A stretch of 64,000 nt of DNA, from positions 186,001-250,000 of IMG/VR virus record IMGVR_UViG_3300042367_000228. One strand, given 5' to 3'. The notes beneath the pieces are model-generated. The model did not search any database, was not told the origin of the DNA, and saw only the letters and a program-made list of their open reading frames with translations. Made by a program: the position numbers and the translations under genes. Positions within the stretch are counted from its first letter, which is position 1, and every line of letters begins with the position of its first letter. Of this stretch, positions 8,881 through 57,039 are shown one piece after another.

Positions 8881-9168
8881 TTATAATTGGTCTAATGTCT
8901 TTAAACTACTAACTGGCATTTCCCATATTTTTCTACGTTCAACACCTTTGGATTGTGCAAATTGTTTAGCATTACATTTACTACAAACATGATAAAATTG
9001 ATTAGTTAATCTTGCTGGATCCATTGATCCTTTATCACGATTAAATATCCGATTACAATTGTCGCACCTTAATACGATTACAGTTTTTTTTCGAAAGTAA
9101 GTGTGAGATTTTCCATATTTACTAATCCTTGTATACTCAGTAGTAACATATTCTGTAGAAATAATCAT
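8881..9168 (-). CDS. Small zinc-binding hypothetical protein
   Basis: CDNC...CSKC. Confidence 0.6.
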   Translation of the reverse strand: MIISTEYVTTEYTRISKYGKSHTYFRKKTVIVLRCDNCNRIFNRDKGSMDPARLTNQFYHVCSKCNAKQFAQSKGVERRKIWEMPVSSLKTLDQL

Positions 9169-38206: not shown

Positions 38207-38737
38207 TCAAACTTTATTTAGCTCTTTTACTTGTGCAATCATATCATTTAATAACACTGGTCTATAGTCATGATGCTCAACACAAACATTAACATATCTA
38301 GGATCAGGAACATCACCGTCCATTACTAGGTTACTATGCAAATGACCATGTAGCTGTCCGCTCCATCTATTCAGTTCACTTGGGTGAATTGGAATATGAC
38401 TCATTAACACATTTTGTTGAACATGGTATGCTCTAATATCTCTAAAGTAAGGAGTATACTCATTAAGTCTAAAGATATCGTGGTTGCCTTTGATAAGAAC
38501 CATATCTTTACAATGTAATCTTGCTAACGTTGACAACGCTCTGCGATTAATTGCAACATCACCAAGAATGTACAATTTGTCAGTTGGTTTAACAGTTTCG
38601 TTGAACCGTTTAATAAGTTCTTCATCCATCTCTTCGTAGTTATCCCACGGACGAACTGGTTTACCAGTTGATGATATAAATTTACAAATTCCAACGTGTC
38701 CAAAGTGAGGATCAGACGTTACCCATACATCTTGCAT
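38207..38737 (-). CDS. Metallophosphoesterase
   Basis: SDPHFGH, LGD, GNHD, SHIP, HGHLH. Confidence 0.85.
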   Translation of the reverse strand: MQDVWVTSDPHFGHVGICKFISSTGKPVRPWDNYEEMDEELIKRFNETVKPTDKLYILGDVAINRRALSTLARLHCKDMVLIKGNHDIFRLNEYTPYFRDIRAYHVQQNVLMSHIPIHPSELNRWSGQLHGHLHSNLVMDGDVPDPRYVNVCVEHHDYRPVLLNDMIAQVKELNKV

Positions 38738-38745
38738 TAGTTCTC

Positions 38746-39207
38746 CTATACATGCCAAATTTCAGCAAAGCCTTCTTCTTCAGATGGCATTTGAAAAATA
38801 CTAGTCATCGATGCAATAACTGCATCGGATATGTTTTTGCCTGGACGACTTGCTAATCGTCTTGTAAGTTCATCAGGGTCTGGTGTAGAAAATACTACAG
38901 CAATCTTTTTATAACATAGAAACAGTTTTAACTTGTTAGCTCGCGACTTAACTGTTAAATTAGTTTGATCCCATATTGCATCGGTTTCTGCCACATTTGT
39001 AGTGATTGCTCGTTTGTTTAATAGTTGAGTTGCAGTTTTAACATAATCATCAAAAACTTCATTGTATGTTTTTCCAACTGACACTGCATACTCCTCTATA
39101 AACTTGTCTGAGCTAAGATACACACAATTCTTAGCCCAACTTTGATTGTTAACCCATGTAGACTTACCTGAACCAGGTACACCTACTAACATATAAAGTG
39201 TATTCAT
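38746..39207 (-). CDS. Polynucleotide kinase-like P-loop protein (AAA_33)
   Basis: GVPGSGKST, SSD, DQTNL, RxxxR lid. Confidence 0.8.
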   Translation of the reverse strand: MNTLYMLVGVPGSGKSTWVNNQSWAKNCVYLSSDKFIEEYAVSVGKTYNEVFDDYVKTATQLLNKRAITTNVAETDAIWDQTNLTVKSRANKLKLFLCYKKIAVVFSTPDPDELTRRLASRPGKNISDAVIASMTSIFQMPSEEEGFAEIWHV

Positions 39208-41142: not shown

Positions 41143-42555
41143 TTAGACCGCGTAGCGATCGTTCATAATTGTTTGTAACATAATTGCTTGTGGAGTAAAG
41201 TCATCCATATCAGCTGCAAGTACACTTGTCATAATACTTGGACTAAATCCACTTACTAATGCTGCACCTTTTGCATTATACTTAACTGGCACATTGTCAT
41301 GTGAGTTTAAGTTCCAAAATACAACTTGTGGTACTGTATACCCTGCATCTTCATACTTACGACGAATCATTTTTATTGCAGAATCATCATGTGTTACACA
41401 AGCATCAAATTGCATATCAGATAATATTAAAAGTATCTGTGGCATTTCTTCAACAGGTACATTACCATTAACTGCAACTTCTAAAATCTTAGAAAAAGCT
41501 GCATGTAAGTTAGTGCCCATTTGCCAATCACTTTTTGACATCTGCGCATACTTCTCAACTATATTACCTTTTAGTGTAACTAACTCTGGTTTAGAGCTAA
41601 ATGTTAAGAATGTGTCTTTAAACTTACCAGCATTTTTATCTGCTAAGTATATTCCTAAAGATAATGAAACATCCATACATGTAACAGTTTTGCTTTTACC
41701 TGCAGGACAGCCCATAGAACCTGATACATCAACTAATGGTAAAATACTTGCATCACCGACATAGTTAGGTAACGCGTCCCATTGTGCAATAATGTGTTGT
41801 TTTTCAAGTAGTGATGGTTGAGACCACCAACCACCTAACCCCTTAACAATTTCATATGGATAGATCGCACCTGCGTTAACTTTAACAGTTGGATCATCAC
41901 CTTTAACTAATTTAGCAATGTATTCAGCATACTTATCAGTGTGACGAGCAAATGCTTTTTTGTAGCGTGAAGAAGCTACAGATGGAACATGGCTAAAGTT
42001 AATAGCGTCCCATTGGTTAGCACACATTTGTGTTTCAACTACTTTAGTAAGTGAAACAAGTGTTTTGCGATAACGTTTTGGAGACCAACCTAAGTAGTTA
42101 CGTAATTGTACAGCAGTATCTCCTTTACGTGGAATCCATTTAGCAGCAAGTCCATTTTGCGCTTCTAATGCATCTTTAATTAATCCAAATGCATAGTCCT
42201 TTAAGTTTTGTGTTTTGAACACAAGTAAGTCATCGTAGCGACCGAGTTCAGGAACTTTAGCTGCAAGTTTTTTAGCAGCATCTGGATCTGAGTTTTCAAG
42301 ATGTAATAAAATATCTCTAAACAACTGACGTTCACCTGCACCGCCACGTACATCACGTACCCAAGCTGCAATACGTAATGCAAGATCTCTATCTTCTACA
42401 TAAGCAGCAACAAACTCTGGGGTGATGTTTTTCCCACGTGATGCACCTGCCTTAAAGAAGAGATCAACTAATGCACTTGAGGTTGATTTACGTGCTTTCA
42501 TACCGTTTTCAGTACGTGCTTCTTGATTTGCTATTGCTTCAATAAATGTTGACAT
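41143..42555 (-). CDS. TROVE/vWA-domain protein (Ro60/Rsr-like, DUF2828-type)
   Basis: N-terminal TENG..VDLFF..RDVRGGAGER..GRYDDL..AAKWIPR helical region; C-terminal vWA with MIDAS DVSGS, T (MGTN) and SDMQFD. Confidence 0.8.
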   Translation of the reverse strand: MSTFIEAIANQEARTENGMKARKSTSSALVDLFFKAGASRGKNITPEFVAAYVEDRDLALRIAAWVRDVRGGAGERQLFRDILLHLENSDPDAAKKLAAKVPELGRYDDLLVFKTQNLKDYAFGLIKDALEAQNGLAAKWIPRKGDTAVQLRNYLGWSPKRYRKTLVSLTKVVETQMCANQWDAINFSHVPSVASSRYKKAFARHTDKYAEYIAKLVKGDDPTVKVNAGAIYPYEIVKGLGGWWSQPSLLEKQHIIAQWDALPNYVGDASILPLVDVSGSMGCPAGKSKTVTCMDVSLSLGIYLADKNAGKFKDTFLTFSSKPELVTLKGNIVEKYAQMSKSDWQMGTNLHAAFSKILEVAVNGNVPVEEMPQILLILSDMQFDACVTHDDSAIKMIRRKYEDAGYTVPQVVFWNLNSHDNVPVKYNAKGAALVSGFSPSIMTSVLAADMDDFTPQAIMLQTIMNDRYAV

Positions 42556-42566
42556 ATTATTCTCCT

Positions 42567-42601
42567 CAGTTTATGTTGTGTTTTGTGCTGTTAATAAACT
42601 T
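42567..42601 (-). promoter_or_regulatory. Payload-less Y-like stem element in the 5' UTR of the TROVE gene
   Basis: AGTTTAT-TA-ACAGCAC..ATAAACTG directly followed by AGGAG RBS and ATG. Confidence 0.6.
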
Positions 42602-42889: not shown

Positions 42890-43029
42890 CAGGATAGTTT
42901 GGGCGTTTAGTTGTTTATTTTACAGTCGAGCATTGCCCCTCGACTGATGCTTGCACAATGACTGCTAGTGCAAGCTAATTAGAAAGCTAGTTCTTAGACC
43001 AGCAAATTCTGTTTGCTGAACCTATCCTA
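42890..43029 (-). ncRNA. Y-like RNA with multi-hairpin payload
   Basis: TAGGATAG-GT-TCAGCAA..CTATCCTG; internal hairpins GCTTGCAC/GTGCAAGC and CAGTCGAG/CTCGACTG. Confidence 0.65.
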
Positions 43030-43036
43030 TTTTTAA

Positions 43037-43135
43037 CGGTATAGTAGTTCTTACTTTTTTTATACTAGGTAAAGAGTCCTAGGGTTGTCTGTGACACCAC
43101 AGACCAGCCATAGTTGTGTTGCAGTATCTATACCA
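43037..43135 (-). ncRNA. Y-like RNA with two-hairpin payload
   Basis: TGGTATAG-AT-ACTGCAA..CTATACCG; hairpins GTCTGTG/CACAGAC and CTAGG/CCTAG. Confidence 0.65.
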
Positions 43136-43140
43136 AACTG

Positions 43141-44684: not shown

Positions 44685-45437
44685 ATGAATCTATTATTTT
44701 GTCAATGCTGTAATGCATCTTTTATTCCAAAAGCAGGATCTCTTGGAAAGTTTTGTTCTTTATCATGCTCGTCTCGGCATAATAACAAACTTAGTACTGA
44801 AAAGAAAATTTCTAAATACATGTTAAATCCTCTAGCATGCAACTGTTGTAATAAATCGTTAGCATATGAAAAACGTAAAAATAAATTTTGTTCTAATCGA
44901 TGCGCTGCTATAGTTTCTAATAAGGTTGAACGAAAACGTGGACCAACACCTAAAGAAAAACTACTATATTCAAAAGTAAAATTTTATTTATGTACACATA
45001 CTAACAAGTGGTATGTAAATCGAAATCCTAACGGTACTGTGCGTCGTTCATCGCCATATATTAAATCCGAAAAAGAAAAATATTACGCTGCATCAAGATT
45101 TAAATTTAACGTGTATCACTTTCCTAACGAGTTTAATTTGTCTTTAATCGAAACTCACGGGTGGTATACGTGCCCAGGTAAAAAACGATCAACCTTCCCT
45201 AAAAACTTATTAGGTGTAAGCAGAGATCACATTATATCAGTTAGCTACGGATTTGCAAATAATATCGATCCTGCTATTATATCGCATCCTGCTAATTGTA
45301 GAATTGTTCTACAATCAGATAATAAGAAAAAACATTCTACTTGTGATATAACTTTATCTGAACTATTACAAAAAATTATTATATGGGATCAAAAATACAG
45401 TGAGCGACGTACCGGGCTCGAACCGGTCTTGTTCTAA
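44685..45437 (+). CDS. Free-standing HNH-family endonuclease with N-terminal Zn fingers
   Basis: KFCSxxC repeats; SRDHIISV..HPANCRI...DN.KK; TATAAATA directly upstream; 3' end overlaps tRNA-Gly antisense. Confidence 0.7.
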   Translation: MNLLFCQCCNASFIPKAGSLGKFCSLSCSSRHNNKLSTEKKISKYMLNPLACNCCNKSLAYEKRKNKFCSNRCAAIVSNKVERKRGPTPKEKLLYSKVKFYLCTHTNKWYVNRNPNGTVRRSSPYIKSEKEKYYAASRFKFNVYHFPNEFNLSLIETHGWYTCPGKKRSTFPKNLLGVSRDHIISVSYGFANNIDPAIISHPANCRIVLQSDNKKKHSTCDITLSELLQKIIIWDQKYSERRTGLEPVLF

Positions 45438-45476
45438 CTTGGAAGGATAGTGCCATACCTACTAGGCGAACGTCGC
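45403..45476 (-). tRNA. tRNA-Gly(UCC), CCA not encoded
   Basis: Acceptor GCGACGT/ACGTCGC, loop CT-TCC-AA, T arm ACCGG-TTCGAGC-CCGGT; one mismatch in anticodon stem. Confidence 0.8.
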
Positions 45477-45501
45477 TCACTGTACTCTTTTTCTAAAATA
45501 A

Positions 45502-45557
45502 CTGGATGCATTTTAAATTTCATGGAAAGAAAGTTTAAAGTTGCAGTTAGCATCCAA
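45502..45557 (-). ncRNA. Y-like RNA carrying a Gly(UCC)-like anticodon stem-loop
   Basis: TTGGATGC-TA-ACTGCAA..GCATCCAG; TTTC-TTTCCAT-GAAA. Confidence 0.65.
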
Positions 45558-45581
45558 AACTGTTGTATGCAAATACTATAA

Positions 45582-45632
45582 CTGAATGCATTAAATTCAC
45601 CATTGAAAGTAATAATTGCTGTTAGCATTCAA
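45582..45632 (-). ncRNA. Y-like RNA carrying a Glu(UUC)-like anticodon stem-loop
   Basis: TTGAATGC-TA-ACAGCAA..GCATTCAG; TTATTA-CTTTCAA-TGGTGA (weak, GU-rich stem). Confidence 0.62.
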
Positions 45633-45657
45633 AAACTATAGTATTCGCGTACTATGT

Positions 45658-45734
45658 TGGTCGGGATAACACGATTCGAACATGCGACCTGACCGCCCCA
45701 AACGGCCCGCTCTACCAAACTGAGCTACATCCCG
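45658..45734 (-). tRNA. tRNA-Pro(UGG)
   Basis: Full cloverleaf CGGGATG..TT-TGG-GG..TATCCCG-A-CCA. Confidence 0.92.
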
Positions 45735-45822: not shown

Positions 45823-45907
45823 TGGAGCCAGGTAGGAGACTCGAACTCCTGATGGGTTTCCCCGACGGATTACAAATCCGTTGCAATGGCCACTATGCGA
45901 ACCTGGC
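45823..45907 (-). tRNA. tRNA-Thr(UGU) with long variable arm
   Basis: GCCAGGT/ACCTGGC-T-CCA; ACGGA-TTTGTAA-TCCGT; variable arm GGG-GAAA-CCC. Confidence 0.8.
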
Positions 45908-46011
45908 AAATATAACTATTACTAAAACACTTGATATTTAGTGCTTTAGTAATAGCTATCATTTAAAAATGACAACTACTACACTTTCGTTAATGGAGAA
46001 AGTTTTCTGTT

Positions 46012-46315
46012 GTTTAATGGTGTGCTTTTACGCTAAAGACCTGTCTGCGACATCCTAATTAACTCTCGGACATGTTAAGTTTAACTATTAGGAAAAACAT
46101 CCTTAACATTAGGGGGTACCTCCCTCATCCGTTTAATATAGCAATCACTTTAGACTCGTAACAGCCATTAAGGCATATTGCCGGACTCTATATTAACGCA
46201 GTTACATACACTTACAGGTTGCTTTCGCACTGCCGTAAGTTTAAGTATCACTTTAGCAAAGTTTGCGGGTCACTCTTTAAATGATGGCTGCTTATAAGCC
46301 TACATCCCAATAAAC
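46012..46315 (-). ncRNA. 23S rRNA L11-binding domain (H43/H44) mimic with ~238-nt insertion
   Basis: GGATGTAGGCTTATAAGCAGCCATCATTTAAAGAGT ... GCGTAAAAGCACAC closed by GTTTATTGG/CCATTAAAC. Confidence 0.75.
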
Positions 46316-46639
46316 TTATGTTAATGCAATCAATCTATCAATGTTTTGTTCCATTAATAGCTTGATTCTATCTTTATCAAAATTGTTATTTTGTAAACAG
46401 TTTTGATGTTGTAATCTAAACAAAGTTTCTTTTGCTTCGTCATATATTGATAATGCCCATATCTGCGTACCACAAAACCCACTTGCAGCTAACTTGATCA
46501 TTTGCCATCCGTCACCTTTGATAAACGAATGTTTTCGTTCAAGTTCAGGACCAACATATTTTCTTAGAAACTCATGTGTATCTGATATTCTATTTTCATA
46601 GTCTTCATTATACATTACATTTCCATATATTACTAACAT
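46316..46639 (-). CDS. Hypothetical protein
   Basis: 107-aa ORF with AAGG RBS. Confidence 0.6.
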   Translation of the reverse strand: MLVIYGNVMYNEDYENRISDTHEFLRKYVGPELERKHSFIKGDGWQMIKLAASGFCGTQIWALSIYDEAKETLFRLQHQNCLQNNNFDKDRIKLLMEQNIDRLIALT

Positions 46640-46693
46640 TAGAAACCTTTGTTTAAATTGTTAAATGGGGTAACTGCCTTTACGGTAGCATCC

Positions 46694-47344
46694 TTATTTG
46701 TTATATGTTATTTTTCTACCTTTATACCATCCTTCTGGAATATTAGTAGTTTTAGGAATGGATTTATTTTCAATTCCGTTTGTAATCCACATTTTACCAT
46801 ATTGAGAATTTTTATTTCCTTTTTGATGAATAGAACTTTTTTCACCAATAAGTTTCTTAGTATGTTCAGAATGTGTTTTACCATTAAATGTACCAGACCT
46901 ACCTTTTAATGAATCTGATATTTTTTTAGATATTAACGCAGCAAAAACTGGATCTTCTTTTTTGCGATTTTCAAGAGTAATTTTCCCTCGTGCAAAGTTA
47001 TCTTTTACATTAGAAGTATATCCATTATTTCCATACAAATTCTTTTTATTGTTGTTTATATAATCAAAGCCGCCACGACCGCCTATTTTAATATTATAAG
47101 TTCTAGTACTAGCAACAAATGATTCGTTTACTATTTCAGCTTCTTTATCATACATTTCTTTTGAATTATTAAAAACATGCAATATTTGTTTACTAAACTT
47201 TTCAATACCGTATTTTATTTTAGCTCGATTTAAAATCTTACCTGATCCCATATAATCATCATTTATGTCTAATGTTTTATGACAACCTATATAGATTTTA
47301 TTATTAATGATATTTGTAATTTTGTATATTATGTAATAAGTCAT
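46694..47344 (-). CDS. GIY-YIG homing endonuclease (Seg-like) with NUMOD3
   Basis: YIIYKITN.INNKIYIG.H..Y.GSG; TYN.K.GG.GG; GKTHSEHTK. Confidence 0.85.
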   Translation of the reverse strand: MTYYIIYKITNIINNKIYIGCHKTLDINDDYMGSGKILNRAKIKYGIEKFSKQILHVFNNSKEMYDKEAEIVNESFVASTRTYNIKIGGRGGFDYINNNKKNLYGNNGYTSNVKDNFARGKITLENRKKEDPVFAALISKKISDSLKGRSGTFNGKTHSEHTKKLIGEKSSIHQKGNKNSQYGKMWITNGIENKSIPKTTNIPEGWYKGRKITYNK

Positions 47345-47457
47345 GCATTTAGTGTTAGTAAGGTGTTAACACCTTACTAATCCAATTATTCTTTTAGGAT
47401 AATGATTTAACGTGCGGAACTTTTATAAAGCATCCTAAACCACACAAACATACTAAT

Positions 47458-47532
47458 TGGCGTCGCTACGGGGAATTGAACCCCGGTTGCAAGGATGAAA
47501 ACCTTGTGTCCTAACCACTAGACGATAGCGAC
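47458..47532 (-). tRNA. tRNA-Glu(UUC)
   Basis: GTCGCTA/TAGCGAC-G-CCA; CAAGG-TTTTCAT-CCTTG. Confidence 0.92.
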
Positions 47533-47538
47533 ATATAT

Positions 47539-48050: not shown

Positions 48051-48154
48051 TATATTAGAACACACTACAATAACGGAGTCGAACCGTATACTAAATTGCG
48101 ATTTAGTAGTGAACCGCACTACGTTGATCAGACGCTGTAGTATGCTTTAATATA
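48051..48154 (-). ncRNA. tRNA-like RNA on a long closing stem
   Basis: Three hairpins including T-arm ACGG-TTCGACT-CCGT inside a ~20-bp terminal helix; no CCA. Confidence 0.5.
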
Positions 48155-48164
48155 ACAACTTTAA

Positions 48165-48250
48165 CAGAATAGCTTGCTCACCATTGAGCATTATCGCTAA
48201 GATAGCAATAATGGAATCGAACCATTAAATAATTTGCTGTGACTATTCTA
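48165..48250 (-). ncRNA. YrlA-like RNA (permuted tRNA domain)
   Basis: TAGAATAG-TC-ACAGCAA; T arm ATGG-TTCGATT-CCAT; closed acceptor TATTGCTA/TAGCGATA; D arm GCTC-AATGGT-GAGC; CTATTCTG. Confidence 0.8.
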
Positions 48251-48257
48251 AAATTAA

Positions 48258-48317
48258 CAGGATAGAATTTACTTTTAGATTAAGAGTCCAATGTAAATTG
48301 TTGCTGTTACTATCCTA
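48258..48317 (-). ncRNA. Y-like RNA carrying a Lys(CUU) anticodon stem-loop
   Basis: TAGGATAG-TA-ACAGCAA; AATTTAC/GTAAATT; TTGGA-CTCTTAA-TCTAA; CTATCCTG. Confidence 0.72.
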
Positions 48318-48323
48318 AAACTG

Positions 48324-48536
48324 TTAAGTCCAAACCAATCTTGCTATTGTAGCTTGCTTTGGATCTTTAAATTGAAATATTATTATGTGAGTAGTGTCTG
48401 TTCGTCCACAATGATATTTATAATCAACTTCGTGTACTAAATTGCGTTCCTTGCACCATTTTGATATTTCAAATGCTCTTTTTACATCCCCTGTAAATGT
48501 AGCAAATCCTTCTGCATGTGCGTAATCTGTATTCAT
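48324..48536 (-). CDS. Small hypothetical protein (C-terminal F..L.W family)
   Basis: AAGG RBS; ends FKDPKQATIARLVWT. Confidence 0.6.
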   Translation of the reverse strand: MNTDYAHAEGFATFTGDVKRAFEISKWCKERNLVHEVDYKYHCGRTDTTHIIIFQFKDPKQATIARLVWT

Positions 48537-48555
48537 AGTTACCTTATGTGTTTAT

Positions 48556-48679
48556 CAGAATGCATTTTATTTACCAGTGCGTCTACTCTTTCGCCAAATG
48601 CAATATTGCATTGCAGGACTTGCACCTGCACATCGTTAGATACCGGTTTCCATTAAATTATGATGCAGTTAGCATTCTA
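48556..48679 (-). ncRNA. YrlA-like RNA (permuted class II/Leu-like tRNA domain)
   Basis: TAGAATGC-TA-ACTGCAT; ACCGG/CTGGT stem; short variable hairpin; GCAGG-TGCAAGT-CCTGC; AATGCAA/TTGCATT; GGCGAAAGAGTAGACGC D arm; GCATTCTG. Confidence 0.8.
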
Positions 48680-48686
48680 AATATAG

Positions 48687-48805
48687 CAGGATCCGTTTAA
48701 TATACGCGCTCTAACCGTTAAGCTAACTGTTATTACTAACAGTGTAGGATTCGAACCTACATCACGTGCTTCAAATGCAAATTATTTTATGCTGTTTAGA
48801 TCCTA
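48687..48805 (-). ncRNA. YrlA-like RNA (permuted tRNA domain)
   Basis: TAGGATCT-AA-ACAGCAT; GTAGG-TTCGAAT-CCTAC; ACTGTTA-GTAA-TAACAGT; TA-GCTT-AACGGTTA-GAGC; GGATCCTG. Confidence 0.82.
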
Positions 48806-48818
48806 AAACTTTTAAAAC

Positions 48819-49061
48819 TTATTAAAAAGAACCTTGTAAAGTTTTGGTTTCATCGAGCTGATGCGGTCAACGTTTTACAGACGCCCTTTACTAGTTCCGC
48901 CAACATGACTACCATAGTAACTAGAATCAAAGCACTGTAATTGCCTGAAACTCTCACTCATTACAACTTGCAGTCTATAACTACCCACTGTGCCCCTTCC
49001 GGAGAACACGTTGTGCTTGCTTGCGCAAAAGTTTTTTCAGTAGTTGGGTTCTTTTTAATAA
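48819..49061 (-). ncRNA. Unknown ~240-nt structured RNA
   Basis: Perfect 15-bp terminal stem TTATTAAAAAGAACC/GGTTCTTTTTAATAA around a GC-richer ORF-free core. Confidence 0.55.
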
Positions 49062-49070
49062 ACTTTTTAA

Positions 49071-49147
49071 CAGGTTCCACATAGTGTTACAAATATGTAC
49101 GGAACATCTTTTCCGCACTTCTGCAATGTATTGCTGTAGGAAACCTA
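49071..49147 (-). ncRNA. Y-like RNA with single-hairpin payload
   Basis: TAGGTTTC-CT-ACAGCAA..GTGCGGAA/TTCCGTAC..GGAACCTG. Confidence 0.68.
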
Positions 49148-49160
49148 AAAAACTATTTAA

Positions 49161-49215
49161 CAGAATGTATTTTAGTCATATTCAAAAATGATGTTAAGTT
49201 GCTGTTAACATTCTA
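49161..49215 (-). ncRNA. Short Y-like RNA (possible Gln(UUG)-like loop)
   Basis: TAGAATGT-TA-ACAGCAA..TCAT-TTTTGAAT-ATGA..ACATTCTG. Confidence 0.65.
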
Positions 49216-49220
49216 AAACT

Positions 49221-49249
49221 ATTGTACTACGTAACTAACTGCTTGTCAA
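49221..49249 (-). promoter_or_regulatory. sigma70-type promoter starting at the first base of a Y-like RNA
   Basis: TTGACA-17 nt-TACAAT; predicted +1 falls at ~49214. Confidence 0.75.
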
Positions 49250-49282
49250 CACTTTTTTTTTAATTTTTTTAAGGAGTTTTAA

Positions 49283-49396
49283 CAGGTTTCACAATTTTGA
49301 TCAATTACTCTACCAACTGAGCTAATGTTACAAGTAACATGCAGGAATCGAACCTGCGACACACTGAGATATTAAATTGTTGCTGTAGGAAACCTA
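49283..49396 (-). ncRNA. YrlA-like RNA (permuted tRNA domain, Lys/Asn-like arms)
   Basis: TAGGTTTC-CT-ACAGCAA; TCAGT/ATTGA; GCAGG-TTCGATT-CCTGC; ATGTTAC/GTAACAT; TA-GCTC-AGTTGGTA-GAGT; GAAACCTG. Confidence 0.85.
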
Positions 49397-49713: not shown

Positions 49714-50038
49714 GTTGTGTACCTTTGTTGTTTAGTATGTGCATATTATACACTAATAAAATTGTTTGTCAAGTGTTTTTTATTCTTTTGGATATAACAT
49801 TTCACCAATAAGTAAACAACCAAACGATAATATTAAGTAATCAATAGGTGACAACAGGTATCCACTATCATGTATATACATTAATAAAGTTACATAAAAC
49901 AATATACCTGCTGCTAACCCTTTATTGATCATTTCTTTAACTCATCCAGTCTTTGTATCTCCTTGAAAGCTGCAACTGTTTTAGTAATTGCAATTCCAAA
50001 TAAAGTTCCTACTGCTAACGCTATCGGTACTAGTGGCA

Positions 50039-50424: not shown

Positions 50425-51528
50425 TTACATTTCCTCTTGGGCTAAAAACCATGTACGTGCTACATATTTAACTCTTGTTATTACATCTTTGATTTCTAGA
50501 TGGCTAGCAACAAGTGTATCAGTTTCTTCTTTAACAACATCGTCTGCAATCCATTTTAAGAATACAGGAGTGCTTTTAGGTTCAATACTGATGTTGTTTA
50601 CTTTTAAGTATTCTAAACCTTGAGTAAGTCTAGATTCAGTAACTACTGTATCAGCAAACTCGTTAATGGAGTTAACTTTTTCTACATCAACACTTGCTAG
50701 TGTTTTAACTTTAGATGAACTGTGTTTTTCACCTTTAACTTTAAACATAAATCGTGATTGTTCATAACCAGGAGTAACACATTTCCAAACAATACCTTCA
50801 CCTACACCTTCAACACCAAAGTGTTGAGCAATTGGACATTGTTGTTCTACTGCAACAGTAAGATCCGCAAGCTTGTTTTGCGCAAGCTCAGGTTCGTTAA
50901 AGTTGATATCCATTGTGTATGTTTGGAAGTCATAAATTGTAAATAAATTTTCAGGCCATGCTTCGGTATTAAAACCTGCAATTTCTTTAGCATACGCAAT
51001 AGTATGCTTAAACTCAGTTGGAGTAAAATAAACGCGTTGAACATCTTCGTCTTCATTTTTACCAGCTGACCATGCAACAATGCCAAAGATAATAAACATT
51101 TTAGGAACATTACTAATTCCTACACCTTTTTGAACACCTTGCCCGCACCATTCGCCAAAGATAGAATAATGTGTTAAGTTGTAATCAACTTTGTGATGTG
51201 CAGCTGAAGTTAATAAGTTAATAAACGTTTCTTTATGTTGTTGTGCATATTTTGCCCAACCATAATTGTCATCATCTATTGTTAAAATACGTTCACGTGA
51301 TTGCGCCCAAAATTCATTATATTTAGGAAACTCGCAAGCAACGCTAGCATTAGTGCCATGTGCCTTAACAGAACCTTCAAACGTTAAAGTTGGCATAGGT
51401 GCAAATGGATCAAAGGTTGGTGCACCATTGTCATCTAACCCTTTAAAGGTAGCACGACTTTTAACTTCTCTAACTACTTGTCTAAATTGATTAATGCTGG
51501 GCCATGATTTGTGTACTTGTTTTGACAT
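50425..51528 (-). CDS. RNA ligase, Rnl2 family
   Basis: KAHGTN (motif I), QSR, FGEWCG (III), FG (IIIa), EGIVW (IV), FKVK (V) plus C-terminal Rnl2 domain. Confidence 0.85.
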   Translation of the reverse strand: MSKQVHKSWPSINQFRQVVREVKSRATFKGLDDNGAPTFDPFAPMPTLTFEGSVKAHGTNASVACEFPKYNEFWAQSRERILTIDDDNYGWAKYAQQHKETFINLLTSAAHHKVDYNLTHYSIFGEWCGQGVQKGVGISNVPKMFIIFGIVAWSAGKNEDEDVQRVYFTPTEFKHTIAYAKEIAGFNTEAWPENLFTIYDFQTYTMDINFNEPELAQNKLADLTVAVEQQCPIAQHFGVEGVGEGIVWKCVTPGYEQSRFMFKVKGEKHSSSKVKTLASVDVEKVNSINEFADTVVTESRLTQGLEYLKVNNISIEPKSTPVFLKWIADDVVKEETDTLVASHLEIKDVITRVKYVARTWFLAQEEM

Positions 51529-53345: not shown

Positions 53346-54023
53346 TCAAGGTTTAAGTTTGCAATTATTTCCGTGATATCGTTTCATGCCATTAGATTTT
53401 CCTAATTTATTGCAATAAGGGCATATAATTATCTCCATCGGCGATGTTTGAAAAACTTTACCTTTTCTTACAGCACTCATTTTATTGCGAGTCTCTATAG
53501 ATGGAGATTTGCCTTTATTAGGAGGTATCCTTCCTTTATTTGAATTGCTGATTTTAGATTTGTGTTCTTCTGATAAAGGTTTTCCTTTTTTAGCTACAGA
53601 TAATTTAGATTTATACTCTATAGACATGTTTTCTTTAGCTTTACTAATTTTACTTCGAGTTTCGGATGTATGAGTTTTTCCTGTATTTGCTATAGCAATT
53701 TTAGATTTGTGTTCTTCTGATAAAGGTTTTCCTTTATGCATTACACTAACTGCTTTAGCAAATTCTTTTCTAATCCAACCATAACTTTTATTAGTAGCGC
53801 GACCAACTGACATCATATGTGCTGCTTTAATTAATTTATGATTATTTGGATATATCTTTATAAGTACTTGATGTGCTACATAATGAGCTTCAGGTGTTAA
53901 CTTTACTATATTAGTTGCATGATTAGTACCTCCCATACATTTGGGAATGATATGATGCTTTTCTGTATAATCTGCAATCATATCTTTTGCAGTTAATTGT
54001 TCGTATATTTTTTGATAATTCAT
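53346..54023 (-). CDS. HNH homing endonuclease with NUMOD3 repeats
   Basis: EKHHIIPKCMGG.N...N...LT..AH..AH; repeated KGKPLSEEHKSKI. Confidence 0.88.
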   Translation of the reverse strand: MNYQKIYEQLTAKDMIADYTEKHHIIPKCMGGTNHATNIVKLTPEAHYVAHQVLIKIYPNNHKLIKAAHMMSVGRATNKSYGWIRKEFAKAVSVMHKGKPLSEEHKSKIAIANTGKTHTSETRSKISKAKENMSIEYKSKLSVAKKGKPLSEEHKSKISNSNKGRIPPNKGKSPSIETRNKMSAVRKGKVFQTSPMEIIICPYCNKLGKSNGMKRYHGNNCKLKP

Positions 54024-55421: not shown

Positions 55422-56615
55422 ATGAAAATACAAGAAATTATAAGCGAAGCAATATCAGGTGCTCACTGGATACACGGATTGCACAATGGGTTAAATGATA
55501 TTTTAGAACAACCGTTAGGACTTACATTTAACTTAGAAACTATAAATGGATTTAATGCCATTGCAGTATACCTTAAAGATATGTCCGACGGCAGGATATG
55601 TAGTTTTTATGAGAAAATGCAACCTAGTGATATTATTTACATGTTAGAAGAGATAGTAAAGATAGCACATTATGTTATACAGCAGAAATATGCTAAAGTG
55701 TGCGCGGATGTAAGTGGAACAAACTTTTCTCATATTCAAATTCTACCTCAGTCTAATAATCCAGGAGCCCTCGCCTCGGCTGGTTATGACTATGTAACAT
55801 TCTATGAAACTGATAAGAATGCTTTCCAACATCGAGATATAGATATGCTAAAAGACTTGTTATATAGTACAGAAGCAATGACTGATGTTAACAGAGGATG
55901 GAGTAATGCTGAACAAAAGAATCTATATGTGCCTGTGATAACTGATATGTTTCAAATCGAACCTGCATTTAGAAATTTGAAACTAGGTGATTTTAGTTTA
56001 GCTGAATTCTTCTTAGACACTAAAAACATAGATACTATGGTTCACGAATTAGTACATATTAGACAACACGCACCTCAATCTAGATATAAAACTAAACGAG
56101 TATTTGATAAAGATACTAAACAGCACAAATTGGTTACTAAACAAGGCACTGAATTTAGAAGTAAAGTAGAGCCAAATCAAGAAAAGTTTTATAATGCAAT
56201 TAGAGATTTAGATAAGTCGCCTGAAAACTATAAAATATATAGTTCGTCGTTACAAGAAATACCAGCACATGCGCATGATGCAGCAGTTAGCGTTATACGT
56301 CATTTAGATTTTGCATGGGGCGGTTCGGTTGATGAATATGGCAGAGACGTGTCACATTTAAAATCTCAAGTAAAAGCACTTAAATTGATTATTGCTAATT
56401 TGTCTAATGGACCAACCGCGTTAAAAGATGTTTATGGTCACCCGATTAAAATTAGAAGATTTGAATATTTCAGTAAGACATTTAATCATCCTAACGATAA
56501 AAAGTTATATCCGGTATATAAAAAATTTGTAAAAATAATGAGTCAAGAATTAATCAATTATTACAATTATTGGAATGAAAAACTTATTAACCTTAGTAAA
56601 TCAAATGGTCAATAA
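55422..56615 (+). CDS. Hypothetical protein with HExxH motif and MKIQEIISE leader
   Basis: VHELVHIRQ followed by Y....QEIPAH (zincin-like). Confidence 0.65.
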   Translation: MKIQEIISEAISGAHWIHGLHNGLNDILEQPLGLTFNLETINGFNAIAVYLKDMSDGRICSFYEKMQPSDIIYMLEEIVKIAHYVIQQKYAKVCADVSGTNFSHIQILPQSNNPGALASAGYDYVTFYETDKNAFQHRDIDMLKDLLYSTEAMTDVNRGWSNAEQKNLYVPVITDMFQIEPAFRNLKLGDFSLAEFFLDTKNIDTMVHELVHIRQHAPQSRYKTKRVFDKDTKQHKLVTKQGTEFRSKVEPNQEKFYNAIRDLDKSPENYKIYSSSLQEIPAHAHDAAVSVIRHLDFAWGGSVDEYGRDVSHLKSQVKALKLIIANLSNGPTALKDVYGHPIKIRRFEYFSKTFNHPNDKKLYPVYKKFVKIMSQELINYYNYWNEKLINLSKSNGQ

Positions 56616-56638
56616 AAAAGCTGCCCTAAGGCAGCTTT
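56615..56638. terminator. Intrinsic terminator between tmRNA and convergent CDS
   Basis: AAAAAAGCTGCC-CTAA-GGCAGCTTT. Confidence 0.8.
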
Positions 56639-56641
56639 AGT

Positions 56642-56983
56642 TGTATTTTGGTTAATAAGGCATACATGCCCCAGAGGGGTAGGTTATTAAGCTACCATGT
56701 CAGCTGCTTCCAAAGAGAAGTCAACTGTCATATACTCGAATTTAGATGCTTTTGCGTCTATAAGTTTTGCGCTGTTTAGGACAGTCACCTCACCTGTTGC
56801 CGTCTCCATTATCTCACCAAGTCGAATCCAATTCATCCCCATTATAAAACACACTATCACTTCCCATTTGAGGGGCAGGAAGTCTACGGCTGTTGCCCCA
56901 CTCCGATACCTCTAATGTGTTTTATGGTGGAGATGTGGGGTTTCGAACCCCAGTGTTTGATGCCGTCACTTTGAAGGAATTAC
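56642..56983 (-). ncRNA. ssrA: Permuted two-piece tmRNA
   Basis: Acceptor piece ends GGGGTTCGAAACCCCACATCTCCACCA (56925); coding piece starts GGGGATGAATTGGATTCGAC (56840); G3.U70 pair; tag frame 56755-56687 AKASKFEYMTVDFSLEAADMVA followed by two TAA stops. Confidence 0.88.
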
Positions 56984-57039
56984 AACAATAATAAACACAC
57001 TAAAATATTTAATGTGCTTATTATTGTTAACTTGTGCAT

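What the first reader, a model, noticed from the sequence alone, without database searches (positions are those of the whole stretch)
48165..49396. Four circularly permuted tRNA mimics (YrlA architecture) of independent tRNA origin
Seen: copies 48165-48250, 48556-48679, 48687-48805 and 49283-49396 have tRNA arms in the order T arm, acceptor stem closed by a short loop, D arm, with the handle replacing the anticodon loop. Their arms are unrelated in sequence. One has a Leu-like D arm (GGCGAAAGAGTAGACGC) and a variable hairpin. One has Lys/Asn-like arms (GCTCAGTTGGTAGAG, GTCGCAGGTTCGATTCCTGC). One lacks the anticodon-stem equivalent almost entirely. Known: this arm order defines bacterial YrlA RNAs. 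Inference: the phage repeatedly converted different tRNA genes into non-chargeable elbow mimics.
Basis: partly seen in the sequence, partly recalled or inferred. Interest (0 to 1): 0.85.

Follow-up and report, generated by a model that had tools for sequence, protein, structure and literature searches.

The report
Phage Y-like RNAs with tRNA mimics
A giant freshwater phage carries about a dozen small RNA genes built on one conserved "handle", four of which display rearranged tRNA shapes. That handle travels with a Ro60-like protein gene across phages, bacteria and archaea and matches the signature of the orphan Class I RNAs of Dictyostelium, which points to a widespread RNA-protein partnership that has not been described.

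Summary
The four permuted tRNA-like elements are real, at the stated coordinates, on the minus strand. They are a subset of a larger set. The same interval holds three more units without a tRNA module, and the window holds at least 11 units plus a mini-copy in a 5' UTR.

All share a handle:
- 5' UAG plus a 5-6 bp covarying stem
- an unpaired YUAACAGCAA
- the 3' stem, then CUGUU

The Rfam YrlA model hits two units at 39 and 32 bits, below its threshold of 69. The YrlA GNCGAA motif is absent.

The partner is probably the gene at 41143-42555 (Pfam DUF2828/DUF7788). Its AlphaFold model matches only Ro60/Rsr structures over its full length. Handle and gene co-occur on the same strand, usually adjacent, in IMG/VR phages, cultured Listeria, Synechococcus, Salmonella and mycobacterial phages, and bacterial and archaeal genomes. 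A motif-first search confirms the link: 32 of 56 closed handles lie near the gene, against 0 of 23 unclosed matches.

The handle equals the consensus of Dictyostelium Class I RNAs, which were reported as unique to dictyostelids.

The best reading is Y-RNA analogues of a divergent Ro60-like protein that display tRNA-shaped modules, set among RNA-repair genes. Binding and function are inferred. "Independent tRNA origin" cannot be shown.

The parts
49283..49396 (-). U1: handle RNA with a permuted class I tRNA-like module (anticodon-stem equivalent, T arm, 7-bp closed acceptor hairpin, D arm)
   Evidence: z -2.6; YrlA 38.9 bits; ARAGORN calls the re-permuted form; acceptor hairpin swapped compensatorily in L003 and L009
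49161..49215 (-). U2: 55-nt handle RNA without a tRNA module; a sigma-70-like promoter ends about 6 nt upstream
   Evidence: TTGACA-17-TACAAT at 49249-49221; CM 65.3 bits; Class I model 16.6 bits
49071..49147 (-). U3: 77-nt handle RNA carrying a long hairpin
   Evidence: z -3.5; CM 24.3 bits, E 0.008; Class I model 18.9 bits
48812..49060 (-). About 245-nt conserved structured RNA closed by AAGAACC/GGUUCUU with a 5' bulge YAACUACUG; possibly a divergent unit
   Evidence: 92% column identity in five relatives, one hairpin replaced in L009; no Rfam match
48687..48805 (-). U4: handle RNA with a permuted tRNA-like module (A15:U48, 7-bp acceptor hairpin with GUAA loop)
   Evidence: YrlA 32.3 bits; absent as a precise 135-nt cassette in related strains
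48556..48679 (-). U5: handle RNA with a permuted type II (Leu-like) tRNA module; unusual T loop UGCAAGU and a D loop without GG, both conserved in relatives
   Evidence: ARAGORN: long variable arm; orthologues in L003, L008, L009, L036
48258..48317 (-). U6: 60-nt handle RNA whose hairpin has an anticodon-loop-like 7-nt loop CUCUUAA
   Evidence: CM 72.9 bits
48165..48250 (-). U7: minimal handle RNA with T arm, closed acceptor hairpin and D arm, and no anticodon-stem equivalent
   Evidence: z -3.2; CM 30 bits, E 5e-4
45577..45636 (-). U8: short handle RNA between tRNA-Pro and tRNA-Gly; closing triplet UUG/CAG, a compensatory change of the A-U pair
   Evidence: CM 44.3 bits, E 3e-7; not in the training set
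45500..45560 (-). U9: short handle RNA, closing triplet UUG/CAG
   Evidence: CM 50.7 bits, E 1e-8; RNA-library contig 45496-45660 has the highest depth in X3
43037..43137 (-). U10: handle RNA (UGG/CCG closing, bulge AUACUGCAA) upstream of the Ro-like gene
42890..43029 (-). U11: 140-nt handle RNA (bulge GUUCAGCAA) with non-tRNA cargo like that of L008:7110-7272
42567..42601 (-). Mini-handle in the 5' UTR of the Ro-like gene; its 3' CUG abuts the Shine-Dalgarno AGGAG. Candidate autoregulatory site
   Evidence: equivalent short units end 40 nt or less before the ATG in 22 of 69 loci
41143..42555 (-). Ro60-fold protein (helical repeat ring plus vWA domain with a MIDAS motif); Pfam DUF2828+DUF7788, PHROG 850
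   Evidence: pLDDT 93, pTM 0.91; top six PDB hits are all Ro60/Rsr, E 3e-8 to 1e-6
50425..51528 (-). RNA ligase (Rnl2-type fold family) about 1 kb upstream of the array
   Evidence: PF09414; PHROG 548, 4e-58
38207..39207 (-). P-loop kinase (AAA_33, PHROG polynucleotide kinase) and phosphoesterase: candidate RNA end-healing pair
49745..49772 (-). Consensus sigma-70-like promoter before GroES. U1 follows the GroES stop codon directly, so it is probably co-transcribed
   Evidence: 12 of 12 matches; GroES

Best explanation
The interval is part of an array of small non-coding RNA genes that work like Y RNAs for a divergent Ro60-like protein.

Anatomy. Each RNA is closed by a conserved handle: three nearly invariant closing pairs (U.G, A-U, G-C from 5' UAG and 3' CUG), 5-6 covarying pairs, and an unpaired 5' bulge YUAACAGCAA. 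The handle is followed by a variable module and ends in CUGUU.

Inferred mechanism. The handle is the docking site for the Ro-like ring encoded at 41143-42555. The variable module is what the particle presents. In four units that module is a non-chargeable, circularly permuted tRNA body (elbow plus closed acceptor stem). In others it is a hairpin, sometimes with an anticodon-type loop, or a larger fold.

Presented on the ring, tRNA-shaped modules would recruit or titrate tRNA-recognising factors during infection. Candidates are host exonucleases such as PNPase, RNase P, tRNA-cleaving defence nucleases, or the phage's own ligase, kinase and phosphoesterases. A handle copy over the ribosome-binding site of the Ro-like mRNA would let the protein limit its own synthesis.

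Shown:
- the anatomy and the covariation
- the Ro60 fold of the protein
- the two-way genomic coupling of handle and gene
- presence in RNA libraries

Inferred:
- binding of the handle by the protein
- processing into separate RNAs
- the adaptor or decoy role
For: Handle:
- Seven strict units lie in the interval, all on the minus strand. Four more plus a UTR copy lie elsewhere in the window.
- A covariance model built from relatives finds the untrained U8 and U9 at E 3e-7 and 1e-8. Its nine best hits are all at predicted sites on the minus strand.
- In the stem, 4 of 8 pairs show double changes, 42 compensated cells against 13.6 in shuffles, and the three closing pairs are invariant. UAG/CUG becomes UUG/CAG in U8 and U9.

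Protein:
- AlphaFold pLDDT is 93.
- The top six Foldseek hits are all Ro60/Rsr over the full length. All further hits are vWA domains only or non-significant repeat-protein matches.
- The MIDAS residues are invariant in 116 homologues.

Coupling:
- In 70 loci fetched by the protein, 134 units lie on the gene's strand against 2 on the other.
- 45 of 69 loci have a unit within 1 kb upstream of the gene, and 22 have one ending 40 nt or less before the ATG.
- The reverse search used the RNA motif alone. Of 56 closed handles, 32 lie near a DUF2828 gene, all on the same strand. Of 23 unclosed matches, none do.
- The same handle sits next to the gene in Listeria phage LP-125, Synechococcus phage BUCT-ZZ01, Salmonella phage SP116 and mycobacteriophage Halena (the last with a permuted tRNA module). 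It also sits next to it in bacterial and archaeal genomes.

Expression:
- Metatranscriptome contigs cover the array at depth 72-87, against 7 for the ligase gene.
- A P100-like Listeria phage has three very abundant transcripts within 2 kb upstream of its Rsr-like gene (PMC12282133).

Context:
- tRNA genes, an RNA ligase, a kinase and phosphoesterases lie nearby.
- A Ro60-like protein of coliphage Bas63, encoded next to its tRNA cluster, counters a defence system (bioRxiv 10.1101/2024.10.10.617714).
Against: - No binding data exist for any member of this protein family.
- In this phage the main array lies 5.6-6.8 kb from the gene, with tRNAs and ORFs between. Only U10, U11 and the UTR copy are adjacent.
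- Seventeen of 69 loci show no unit with my scan. They may be diverged, or may truly lack one.
- RNA ends are unmapped. The RNA evidence comes from assembled contigs of related strains, which cannot prove transcription or strand.
- The many near-identical loci inflate the raw counts.
- In Dictyostelium the one protein shown to bind a Class I RNA directly is an RRM protein, not a Ro-like one.
- The adaptor or decoy role is an analogy with Y RNAs only.
Confidence: 0.65

Rival explanations
1. They are ordinary members of the bacterial YrlA family, bound by a canonical Rsr/TROVE protein through the usual Y RNA stem.
For: The arm order is the same. The YrlA model hits U1 and U4 and the Halena and L094 units at 38-40 bits. 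The Levitt pair covaries as reported for YrlA (G15:C48 in U1, A15:U48 in U4; PMC4201824). A Ro60-fold gene is on the same strand.
Against: All scores are about half the gathering score of 69. No GNCGAA motif lies near any 5' end. The protein does not match Pfam TROVE or any PDB sequence. The conserved element is a different handle, shared with units that have no tRNA module.
Confidence: 0.12
2. The handle is bound by some other factor (an RRM-type or host protein), or is a processing or stability signal that punctuates tRNA-operon transcripts. On this reading the Ro-like gene is merely a frequent neighbour.
For: Units are interleaved with tRNA genes here and in Felixounavirus. The array looks polycistronic, with few promoters and no terminators. 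In Dictyostelium the look-alike Class I RNA is bound directly by the RRM protein Rnp1A (PMC7919456).
Against: The two-way, same-strand, often abutting linkage to one gene family runs from Listeria phages to archaeal MAGs. The handle copy over the gene's own ribosome-binding site is hard to explain by neighbourhood alone. A 9-bp stem is too short for RNase III.
Confidence: 0.15
3. They are circularly permuted tRNA genes that are cut, ligated (an RNA ligase is encoded nearby) and matured into chargeable tRNAs.
For: The 3' half precedes the 5' half. Re-permuted U1 and U5 are accepted by ARAGORN. An RNA ligase lies 1 kb away. Units in distant phages carry full anticodon hairpins with loops such as CUUCUAA (L020:729-846).
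Against: The window units have no anticodon loop. The acceptor stems are closed by 3-4 nt with no discriminator or CCA. U7 has no anticodon stem at all. U5 lacks G18G19 and U55. Identical handles carry non-tRNA cargo. No bulge-helix-bulge signals or splicing endonuclease were seen.
Confidence: 0.04
4. They are DNA-level repeats: miniature mobile elements with terminal inverted repeats that spread in the tRNA region.
For: Each unit ends in inverted repeats. Units are present or absent as exact cassettes between strains (U4 and U2).
Against: Orientation is fixed relative to one gene (134 to 2). The inverted ends differ between units and change by compensatory substitutions, including G-U pairs. 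The conserved motif sits on one side only. No target duplications were seen.
Confidence: 0.03

Closest known systems
Bacterial YrlA-type Y RNAs with Rsr (Ro60) (Chen et al. 2014, PMC4201824; Rfam RF02553)
   Same: A terminal stem carries the protein site, and an internal module has T arm, closed acceptor-like stem and D arm with tRNA tertiary-pair nucleotides. The genes sit near, and on the strand of, a Ro60-fold protein. RNA repair genes are nearby. Several Y RNAs per locus, some without a tRNA module (YrlB-like).
   Different: The handle sequence differs (YUAACAGCAA bulge and UAG/CUG closure instead of GNCGAA). Scores are 32-40 bits against a gathering score of 69. The protein is DUF2828/DUF7788, about 12-17% identical to solved Ro60s. 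Arrays reach 11 or more units, and the cargo is much more varied.
Thermus phage phiLo Ro60 with Yrl1/Yrl2 (PMC12135203; PDB 9L5Y, 9KOP)
   Same: A phage-encoded Ro60 ring with small RNAs encoded just upstream. It is the best structural match of the window protein. It was shown to bind its RNAs and host PNPase.
   Different: The Yrl RNAs were picked by a CGAA motif and have no tRNA module. The protein belongs to another sequence family.
Dictyostelium Class I RNAs (Rfam RF01414; PMC7919456)
   Same: A 6-bp terminal stem kept by compensatory changes. An unpaired motif next to its 5' strand (model consensus CUUACAGCAA). A 5' (A/U)AG start and a 3' CUGU end. About 55-60 nt for the short units. The remainder is variable. 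Many copies per genome.
   Different: They are eukaryotic, nuclear-encoded genes with their own promoter element, and were reported as absent outside dictyostelids. No tRNA-like cargo has been described. The known direct binder is an RRM protein. The window units score only 17-19 bits, and the best prokaryotic unit scores 32.4 against a gathering score of 41.5. Common descent is not shown.
Ro60-like proteins of cultured phages with suspected RNAs: Bas63 gp130 (bioRxiv 10.1101/2024.10.10.617714) and Listeria phage CKA15_055 (PMC12282133)
   Same: Probably the same protein family, since Felixounavirus and P100-like phages are among the 705 tblastn hits, and it sits next to tRNA clusters. The authors suspected Y RNAs. 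Abundant upstream transcripts were seen in CKA15. An anti-defence phenotype was seen in Bas63.
   Different: Neither study defined the RNAs. Here the units and their shared handle are located, for example LP-125 L073:6664-6927 and SP116 L072:8755-8821 and about 8921-8978. I did not check directly that gp130 and CKA15_055 are DUF2828 members.
Circularly permuted tRNA genes of red algae and some archaea
   Same: The 3' half is encoded before the 5' half, with the acceptor ends joined by a short linker.
   Different: Those mature into normal tRNAs through a circular intermediate and keep an anticodon loop. Here the anticodon loop is replaced by a protein-type handle, or the molecule is opened between the D and anticodon arms.

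Membership tests
YrlA (Rfam RF02553) | Score at or above the curated gathering score (69 bits) | tested here: not met
   No hit at gathering threshold. U1 scores 38.9 bits and U4 32.3. U5 and U7 are not reported at E<=10.
YrlA (Rfam RF02553) | GNCGAA(N0-1)G motif near the 5' end, the proposed Rsr site (PMC4201824) | tested here: not met
   A regular-expression search over all 12 elements finds none near a 5' end. The only GGCGAA lies inside the U5 D arm.
YrlA (Rfam RF02553) | Internal tRNA-like domain: T arm, closed acceptor-like stem, D arm, with tertiary-pair nucleotides | tested here: met
   Met for U1, U4, U5 and U7. U5 deviates (no GG, G55). It is not met for the other seven or more units that share the handle.
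YrlA (Rfam RF02553) | Encoded next to, and on the strand of, a Ro60 (TROVE) orthologue | tested here: inconclusive
   Same strand. The four units lie 5.6-6.8 kb upstream, while U10, U11 and the UTR copy are adjacent. The protein has the Ro60 fold but does not match Pfam TROVE.
YrlA (Rfam RF02553) | Bound by Rsr in vivo; carries tRNA modifications | not testable with these tools
   This needs immunoprecipitation and modification mapping.
Ro60 / Rsr protein family | Helical-repeat ring plus C-terminal vWA domain with a MIDAS motif | tested here: met
   AlphaFold pLDDT 93.3, pTM 0.91. Foldseek hits over the full length are 9L5Y, 2NVO, 1YVR, 9NFA and 9NEN, TM 0.41-0.63, E 3e-8 to 1e-6. D276, S278, S280, T348 and D380 are invariant.
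Ro60 / Rsr protein family | Sequence membership (Pfam TROVE PF05731, or similarity to solved Ro60) | tested here: not met
   Pfam gives only DUF7788 and DUF2828. phmmer against PDB sequences gives no hit at E<=10.
Dictyostelium Class I RNA (Rfam RF01414) | Score at or above the gathering score (41.5 bits) | tested here: not met
   Window U3 scores 18.9 and U2 16.6 bits. The best related unit, L112:3815-3873, scores 32.4 bits.
Dictyostelium Class I RNA (Rfam RF01414) | Short terminal stem kept by compensatory changes, an unpaired 11-nt motif (..UUACAGCAA) beside its 5' strand, a conserved 5' G paired to the C of a 3' CUGU | tested here: met
   Model consensus. Units. L096-L098 read GGUUCCUUACAGCAA. 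True RNA ends were not mapped here.
Dictyostelium Class I RNA (Rfam RF01414) | Length 42-65 nt, upstream promoter element DUSE, dictyostelid host | tested here: not met
   Only U2, U6, U8 and U9 are in the size range. The genes have bacterial-type promoters. The host is a phage.
Permuted tRNA gene | Both halves present with an intact anticodon loop, and a removable linker after a discriminator/CCA site | tested here: not met
   There is no anticodon loop in U1, U4, U5 or U7. Acceptor hairpins are closed by 3-4 nt without CCA.

The most novel reading that the evidence does not exclude
The handle RNAs of phages, bacteria and archaea and the Class I RNAs of Dictyostelium are one ancient RNA family. 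Its universal partner is the DUF2828-type Ro60-like protein, a family that also exists in eukaryotes. On this reading the unknown-function protein DDB_G0281243, pulled down with Class I RNA DdR-21, or another amoebal protein, would be that partner. The interchangeable cargo (permuted tRNAs, anticodon-loop hairpins) would form a library of baits with which phages neutralise or repair the damage of tRNA-targeting defences.
Probability: 0.3. Interest if true: 0.92.

Novelty: new variant of a known kind. Interest (0 to 1): 0.85.

Why it matters
**An orphan protein family gets an RNA partner.** DUF2828/DUF7788 has more than 6,000 clusters at 50% identity and occurs in 705 cultured phage genomes, including Felix O1-like, P100-like and other Herelleviridae (Staphylococcus, Enterococcus), Campylobacter, Vibrio and mycobacterial phages. 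This work gives it a Ro60 fold, a defined RNA partner and a precise binding motif to test.

**Earlier observations become explicable.** It explains why two recent studies saw abundant unexplained RNAs, or an anti-defence phenotype, next to this gene.

**Y RNA-like particles look modular.** One constant handle carries swappable cargo, including complete but non-chargeable tRNA bodies. This suggests a general way for phages to present tRNA look-alikes to host enzymes.

[quoted passage not shown] It turns the question of what those RNAs do into a test: do they bind a Ro-like protein?

**Experiments are feasible now.** Several hosts are laboratory strains (E. coli, Salmonella, Listeria, M. smegmatis, Synechococcus PCC 7942).

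Tried and rejected
- **DNA similarity to deposited phages:** none.
- **Sequence search of the protein against the PDB:** none. Only the fold search was informative.
- **Isotype assignment:** I aligned the re-permuted units to 711 distinct tRNAs from the loci. No clear parent emerged, with top identities of 65-73% spread over several isotypes. I therefore make no claim on Lys/Asn or independent origins. RNA-library contigs also show that the U1 arms match real Thr- and Ala-type tRNAs of other organisms.
- **ARAGORN on re-permuted U4:** failed with the cuts tried. Its anticodon stem is only 4 bp and abuts the D stem.
- **Relaxed handle scans**: these pick up many chance hits (for example 18 in the window, 7 on the wrong strand). 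I rely on the strict scans, the covariance model and the closed-versus-unclosed control instead.
- **Cultured phages without a handle:** none was found with my scans in Aeromonas phage Aeh1 or the Staphylococcus phage locus. One doubtful hit was found in Vibrio phage D482.
- **Mobile-repeat, riboswitch and ribozyme readings:** no Rfam family covers the units in the window, in cultured phages or in bacterial loci.
- **Dictyostelium partner:** the protein atlas returned only viral clusters. The 2004 and 2011 Dictyostelium papers are not held. I therefore could not learn what DDB_G0281243 is, nor whether Dictyostelium has a DUF2828 protein.
- **Metatranscriptome evidence:** it comes from assembled contigs of related strains, not reads. 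I could obtain no RNA ends, strand or processing sites.
Full report
**1. What is at the coordinates**

Genes in this part of the window run on the minus strand. Each has a T arm, then a 7-8 bp hairpin closed by 3-4 nt that stands for a sealed acceptor stem, then a D arm.

- U1, U4 and U5 also have an anticodon-stem equivalent that opens into the rest of the RNA. U7 does not.
- U1 keeps U8, A14, G18G19, G53, the UUCGA T loop, C61 and G15:C48. U4 has A15:U48.
- U5 has a 3-bp D stem, a Leu-type D loop and a variable hairpin. It has an odd T loop (UGCAAGU) and no GG, and both oddities are conserved in relatives.
- After cutting the acceptor loop and bridging the anticodon stem in silico, ARAGORN accepts U1 (class I) and U5 (long variable arm). 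It does not accept U4 with my cuts, and accepts U7 only with a grafted anticodon arm.
- Rfam's YrlA model matches U1 at 38.9 bits (E 4e-6) and U4 at 32.3 bits (E 3e-4). Its curated threshold is 69, and nothing passes at gathering level.

**2.

All four elements begin ..UUUUAG, followed by a 5-6 nt stem strand and an unpaired YUAACAGCAA. They end with the complementary strand followed by CUGUUAA.

- A mechanical scan for this arrangement finds exactly seven units in the window. All are on the minus strand inside 48165-49396: the four above plus U2 (55 nt), U3 (77 nt) and U6 (60 nt), which carry only hairpins.
- Reading further afield gives U8 and U9 between tRNA-Pro and tRNA-Gly, with UUG/CAG in place of UAG/CUG, a compensatory change.
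- U10 and U11 lie just upstream of the gene at 41143-42555. A 35-nt mini-handle in that gene's 5' UTR has its CUG touching the Shine-Dalgarno sequence.
- A covariance model built from 30 short units of related phages, run unfiltered over both strands of the window, puts its nine best hits on these sites. They include the untrained U9 (50.7 bits, E 1e-8) and U8 (44.3 bits, E 3e-7).
- In the alignment of short units the three outer pairs never vary. Four inner pairs change on both sides, 42 compensated cells against 13.6 in shuffles. The units were selected for pairing, so only the covariation counts as evidence, not the percentage paired.
- A consensus promoter ends a few bases before U2, and another precedes GroES, whose stop codon abuts U1. 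No terminators separate the units. The array is therefore probably transcribed as precursors.

**3. The partner gene**

The 470-residue product of 41143-42555 matches Pfam DUF7788 (2e-47) and DUF2828 (1e-24) and PHROG 850, 'RNA-binding protein'. It matches no PDB sequence.

- With 115 diverse homologues, AlphaFold gives pLDDT 93 and pTM 0.91.
- Foldseek against the PDB returns as its six best hits only Ro60 proteins, aligned end to end: Thermus phage phiLo, Deinococcus Rsr, Xenopus and human (E 3e-8 to 1e-6, TM up to 0.63). All further hits are vWA domains only or non-significant repeat-protein matches.
- The MIDAS residues of the vWA domain are invariant.
- The family is very large: 6,160 clusters at 50% identity and 705 deposited phage genomes.

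**4. Coupling of handle and gene**

- In 70 IMG/VR loci fetched through the protein, the strict scan finds 134 units on the gene's strand and 2 on the other, giving 73 distinct sequences. Several loci are near-copies of the window phage, so these counts are not independent.
- A slightly relaxed scan gives 170 against 12. Of 69 loci, 45 have a unit within 1 kb upstream of the gene and 22 have one ending 40 nt or less before the start codon.
- The converse test used only the RNA's 5' motif to scan IMG/VR. Of the 79 returned loci examined, 56 have the closing stem, and 32 of these hold a DUF2828 gene in the roughly 10 kb held, always on the same strand. None of the 23 matches without a closing stem does.
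- The same handle lies directly before the gene in Listeria phage LP-125 (three units) and Synechococcus phage BUCT-ZZ01 (three units). It lies between the first tRNAs after the gene in Salmonella phage SP116. It lies just after the 'Ro-like RNA binding protein' of mycobacteriophage Halena, where it carries a permuted tRNA module with a 7-bp acceptor hairpin (YrlA model 39.8 bits).
- In 80 bacterial and archaeal genome loci, one to five tandem units precede the gene. There they close as AAG/CUU.

**5. Cargo**

Across loci the handle carries several kinds of module:
- short hairpins, some with 7-nt loops of anticodon form such as CUCUUAA, CUCAUAA and CUGUUAA
- permuted tRNA bodies
- complete permuted tRNAs with an anticodon hairpin, opened between the D and anticodon arms (for example L020:729-846)
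- folds of 150-260 nt

Orthologues of U1 exchange the whole acceptor hairpin while keeping it paired. Related strains in RNA libraries lack U4 or U2 as exact cassettes. The tRNA-like modules are therefore selected structures on a modular scaffold.

**6. Origin of the tRNA modules**

Re-permuted units were compared with 711 distinct tRNAs from the loci.
- U1 is closest to Asn (73%), but Phe, Arg and Thr follow at 66-72%.
- U1 and U4 are 72% identical to each other.
- U5 has no clear parent, with Cys and Leu at 65-69%.

Only the class I against class II difference is firm. The claim of repeated conversion of different tRNA genes by this phage cannot be decided, and the units predate the split from relatives whose protein is 80-89% identical.

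**7. Expression**

Assembled contigs from freshwater metatranscriptomes of related strains cover the array at word depth 72-87. They cover U8 and U9 at 81, GroES at 33-65 and the RNA ligase gene at about 7. Such unevenness suggests RNA instead of carried-over DNA, but contigs give no strand or ends.

Independent support comes from a P100-like Listeria phage. Cappable-seq there showed three very abundant transcripts within 2 kb upstream of its Rsr-like gene, and the authors wondered whether they were Y RNAs (PMC12282133). LP-125 has its three handle units, and also a ROOL-like RNA, in that position.

**8. Relation to known systems**

*Y RNAs.* Y RNAs with tRNA-like domains next to Ro60 are known in bacteria and 22 phages (PMC4201824). 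A phage Ro60 with two upstream Y-like RNAs has been solved and binds host PNPase (PMC12135203). The present RNAs share that logic and the arm order. They fail the family's tests: score, the GNCGAA motif, and a TROVE-type protein.

*Dictyostelium Class I RNAs.* The handle instead coincides with the Rfam model of these RNAs: a 6-bp terminal stem, CUUACAGCAA, a variable middle and a terminal CUG.
- The published description matches point for point: 42-65 nt, a stem kept by compensatory changes, an 11-nt motif beside the 5' strand, an AAG start and a CUGU end (PMC7919456).
- Some prokaryotic units read GGUUCCUUACAGCAA.
- Scores stay below threshold: 32.4 and 24.1 bits in an archaeal MAG, 18.9 and 16.6 in the window, against a gathering score of 41.5.
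- That paper concluded that Class I RNAs exist only in dictyostelids.
- Its preprint lists the proteins pulled down with one such RNA as GuaB, NdkC, the RRM protein CIBP, and DDB_G0281243 of unknown function.
- I could not determine whether any amoebal protein belongs to DUF2828. Plant members exist according to record annotations and the plant papers found by the DUF2828 term search.

**9. Mechanism proposed**

The handle is the docking site of the Ro-like ring, as the conserved bulged stem is in Y RNAs. The variable module is what the particle presents.

- The neighbourhood holds tRNA genes, an RNA ligase, a P-loop kinase of the polynucleotide-kinase type, phosphoesterases and a two-piece tmRNA. 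The same theme recurs in Listeria phage (RtcB, a second ligase, a phosphoesterase). It recalls the rsr-yrlA-rtcBA operon.
- A Ro60-like protein of coliphage Bas63, next to its tRNA cluster, counters a defence system.
- I therefore favour an RNP that brings tRNA-recognising enzymes to the ring or diverts them, for RNA quality control, repair or counter-defence.
- I also propose feedback control through the UTR handle.

All of these functional steps are inference.

**10. Verdict**

The YrlA filing is partly right as an analogy and wrong as a membership. The larger finding is an undescribed, very widespread handle-RNA family coupled to a divergent Ro60-like protein, with a possible link to an orphan eukaryotic RNA class.

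Noticed in passing
window 46266-46307 (-), within non-coding 45975-46315: A 42-nt stretch closed by GGG/CCC is a near copy of the 23S rRNA GTPase-associated centre hairpin (the L11/thiostrepton region, recognised from memory). rRNA contigs pile up there at 20,799x in one RNA library. It is conserved in all clade relatives, and one (L009) is still closer to the bacterial rRNA sequence. It may be a phage-encoded mimic of a ribosomal protein-binding site.
   Followed up: partly
window 56596-57017 (-): A two-piece (permuted) tmRNA gene (Rfam tmRNA_permuted, 101.9 bits; ARAGORN gives a tag peptide). Synechococcus phage BUCT-ZZ01 has one too, a few kb from its Ro-like gene (L071:2780-3076).
   Followed up: partly
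window 48812-49060 (-): An about 245-nt RNA-like element sits between U3 and U4. It is closed by a 7-bp stem with a 5' bulge YAACUACUG and is 92% conserved in relatives, with one hairpin replaced in L009. It has no Rfam match. It may be a divergent handle unit with large cargo.
   Followed up: partly
window 48060-48150 (-): A tRNA-like element in normal arm order has an 8-bp acceptor stem, a canonical T arm, a D-like arm without GG and two extra hairpins. Neither ARAGORN nor Rfam calls it. It is conserved next to tRNA-Glu in L009.
   Followed up: no
L073:5471-6022 (Listeria phage LP-125): A ROOL-like RNA (87 bits, gathering score 99) lies 1 kb upstream of the Ro-like gene and its three handle units. 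It could account for one of the abundant transcripts reported for the related phage CKA15.
   Followed up: no
window 48324-48536, 46316-47536, 49152-49256: Strain-level cassettes are visible in RNA-library contigs. The 70-aa ORF between U5 and U6 is missing in relatives. ORF107, the GIY-YIG homing endonuclease and tRNA-Glu are replaced by 164 nt holding another tRNA. U2 is replaced by 35 nt. An HNH endonuclease gene lies nearby (53346-54023).
   Followed up: partly
window 48556-48679 (U5); L036:1069-1187; L008 and L009 orthologues: One class of permuted tRNA module pairs an unusual T loop (U-G-C-R-A-N-U, with G at the place of U55) with a D loop lacking GG (..AAGAGUAG..). Both features are conserved together across distant phages, which suggests an alternative elbow contact.
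   Followed up: no
window 45434-45628 (-) and 48548-48700 (+): Mechanical ORFs of 64 and 50 aa overlap handle units U8/U9 and U4/U5. They are probably not genes.
   Followed up: no
loci L001-L077: The Ro-like gene sits in unusually tRNA-rich DNA. ARAGORN finds 1,002 tRNA genes in the 77 loci plus the window, many with encoded CCA.
   Followed up: no
window 45823-45907 (-): The tRNA-Thr(UGU) carries a 10-nt insertion in the variable region, although Thr is a class I tRNA.
   Followed up: no
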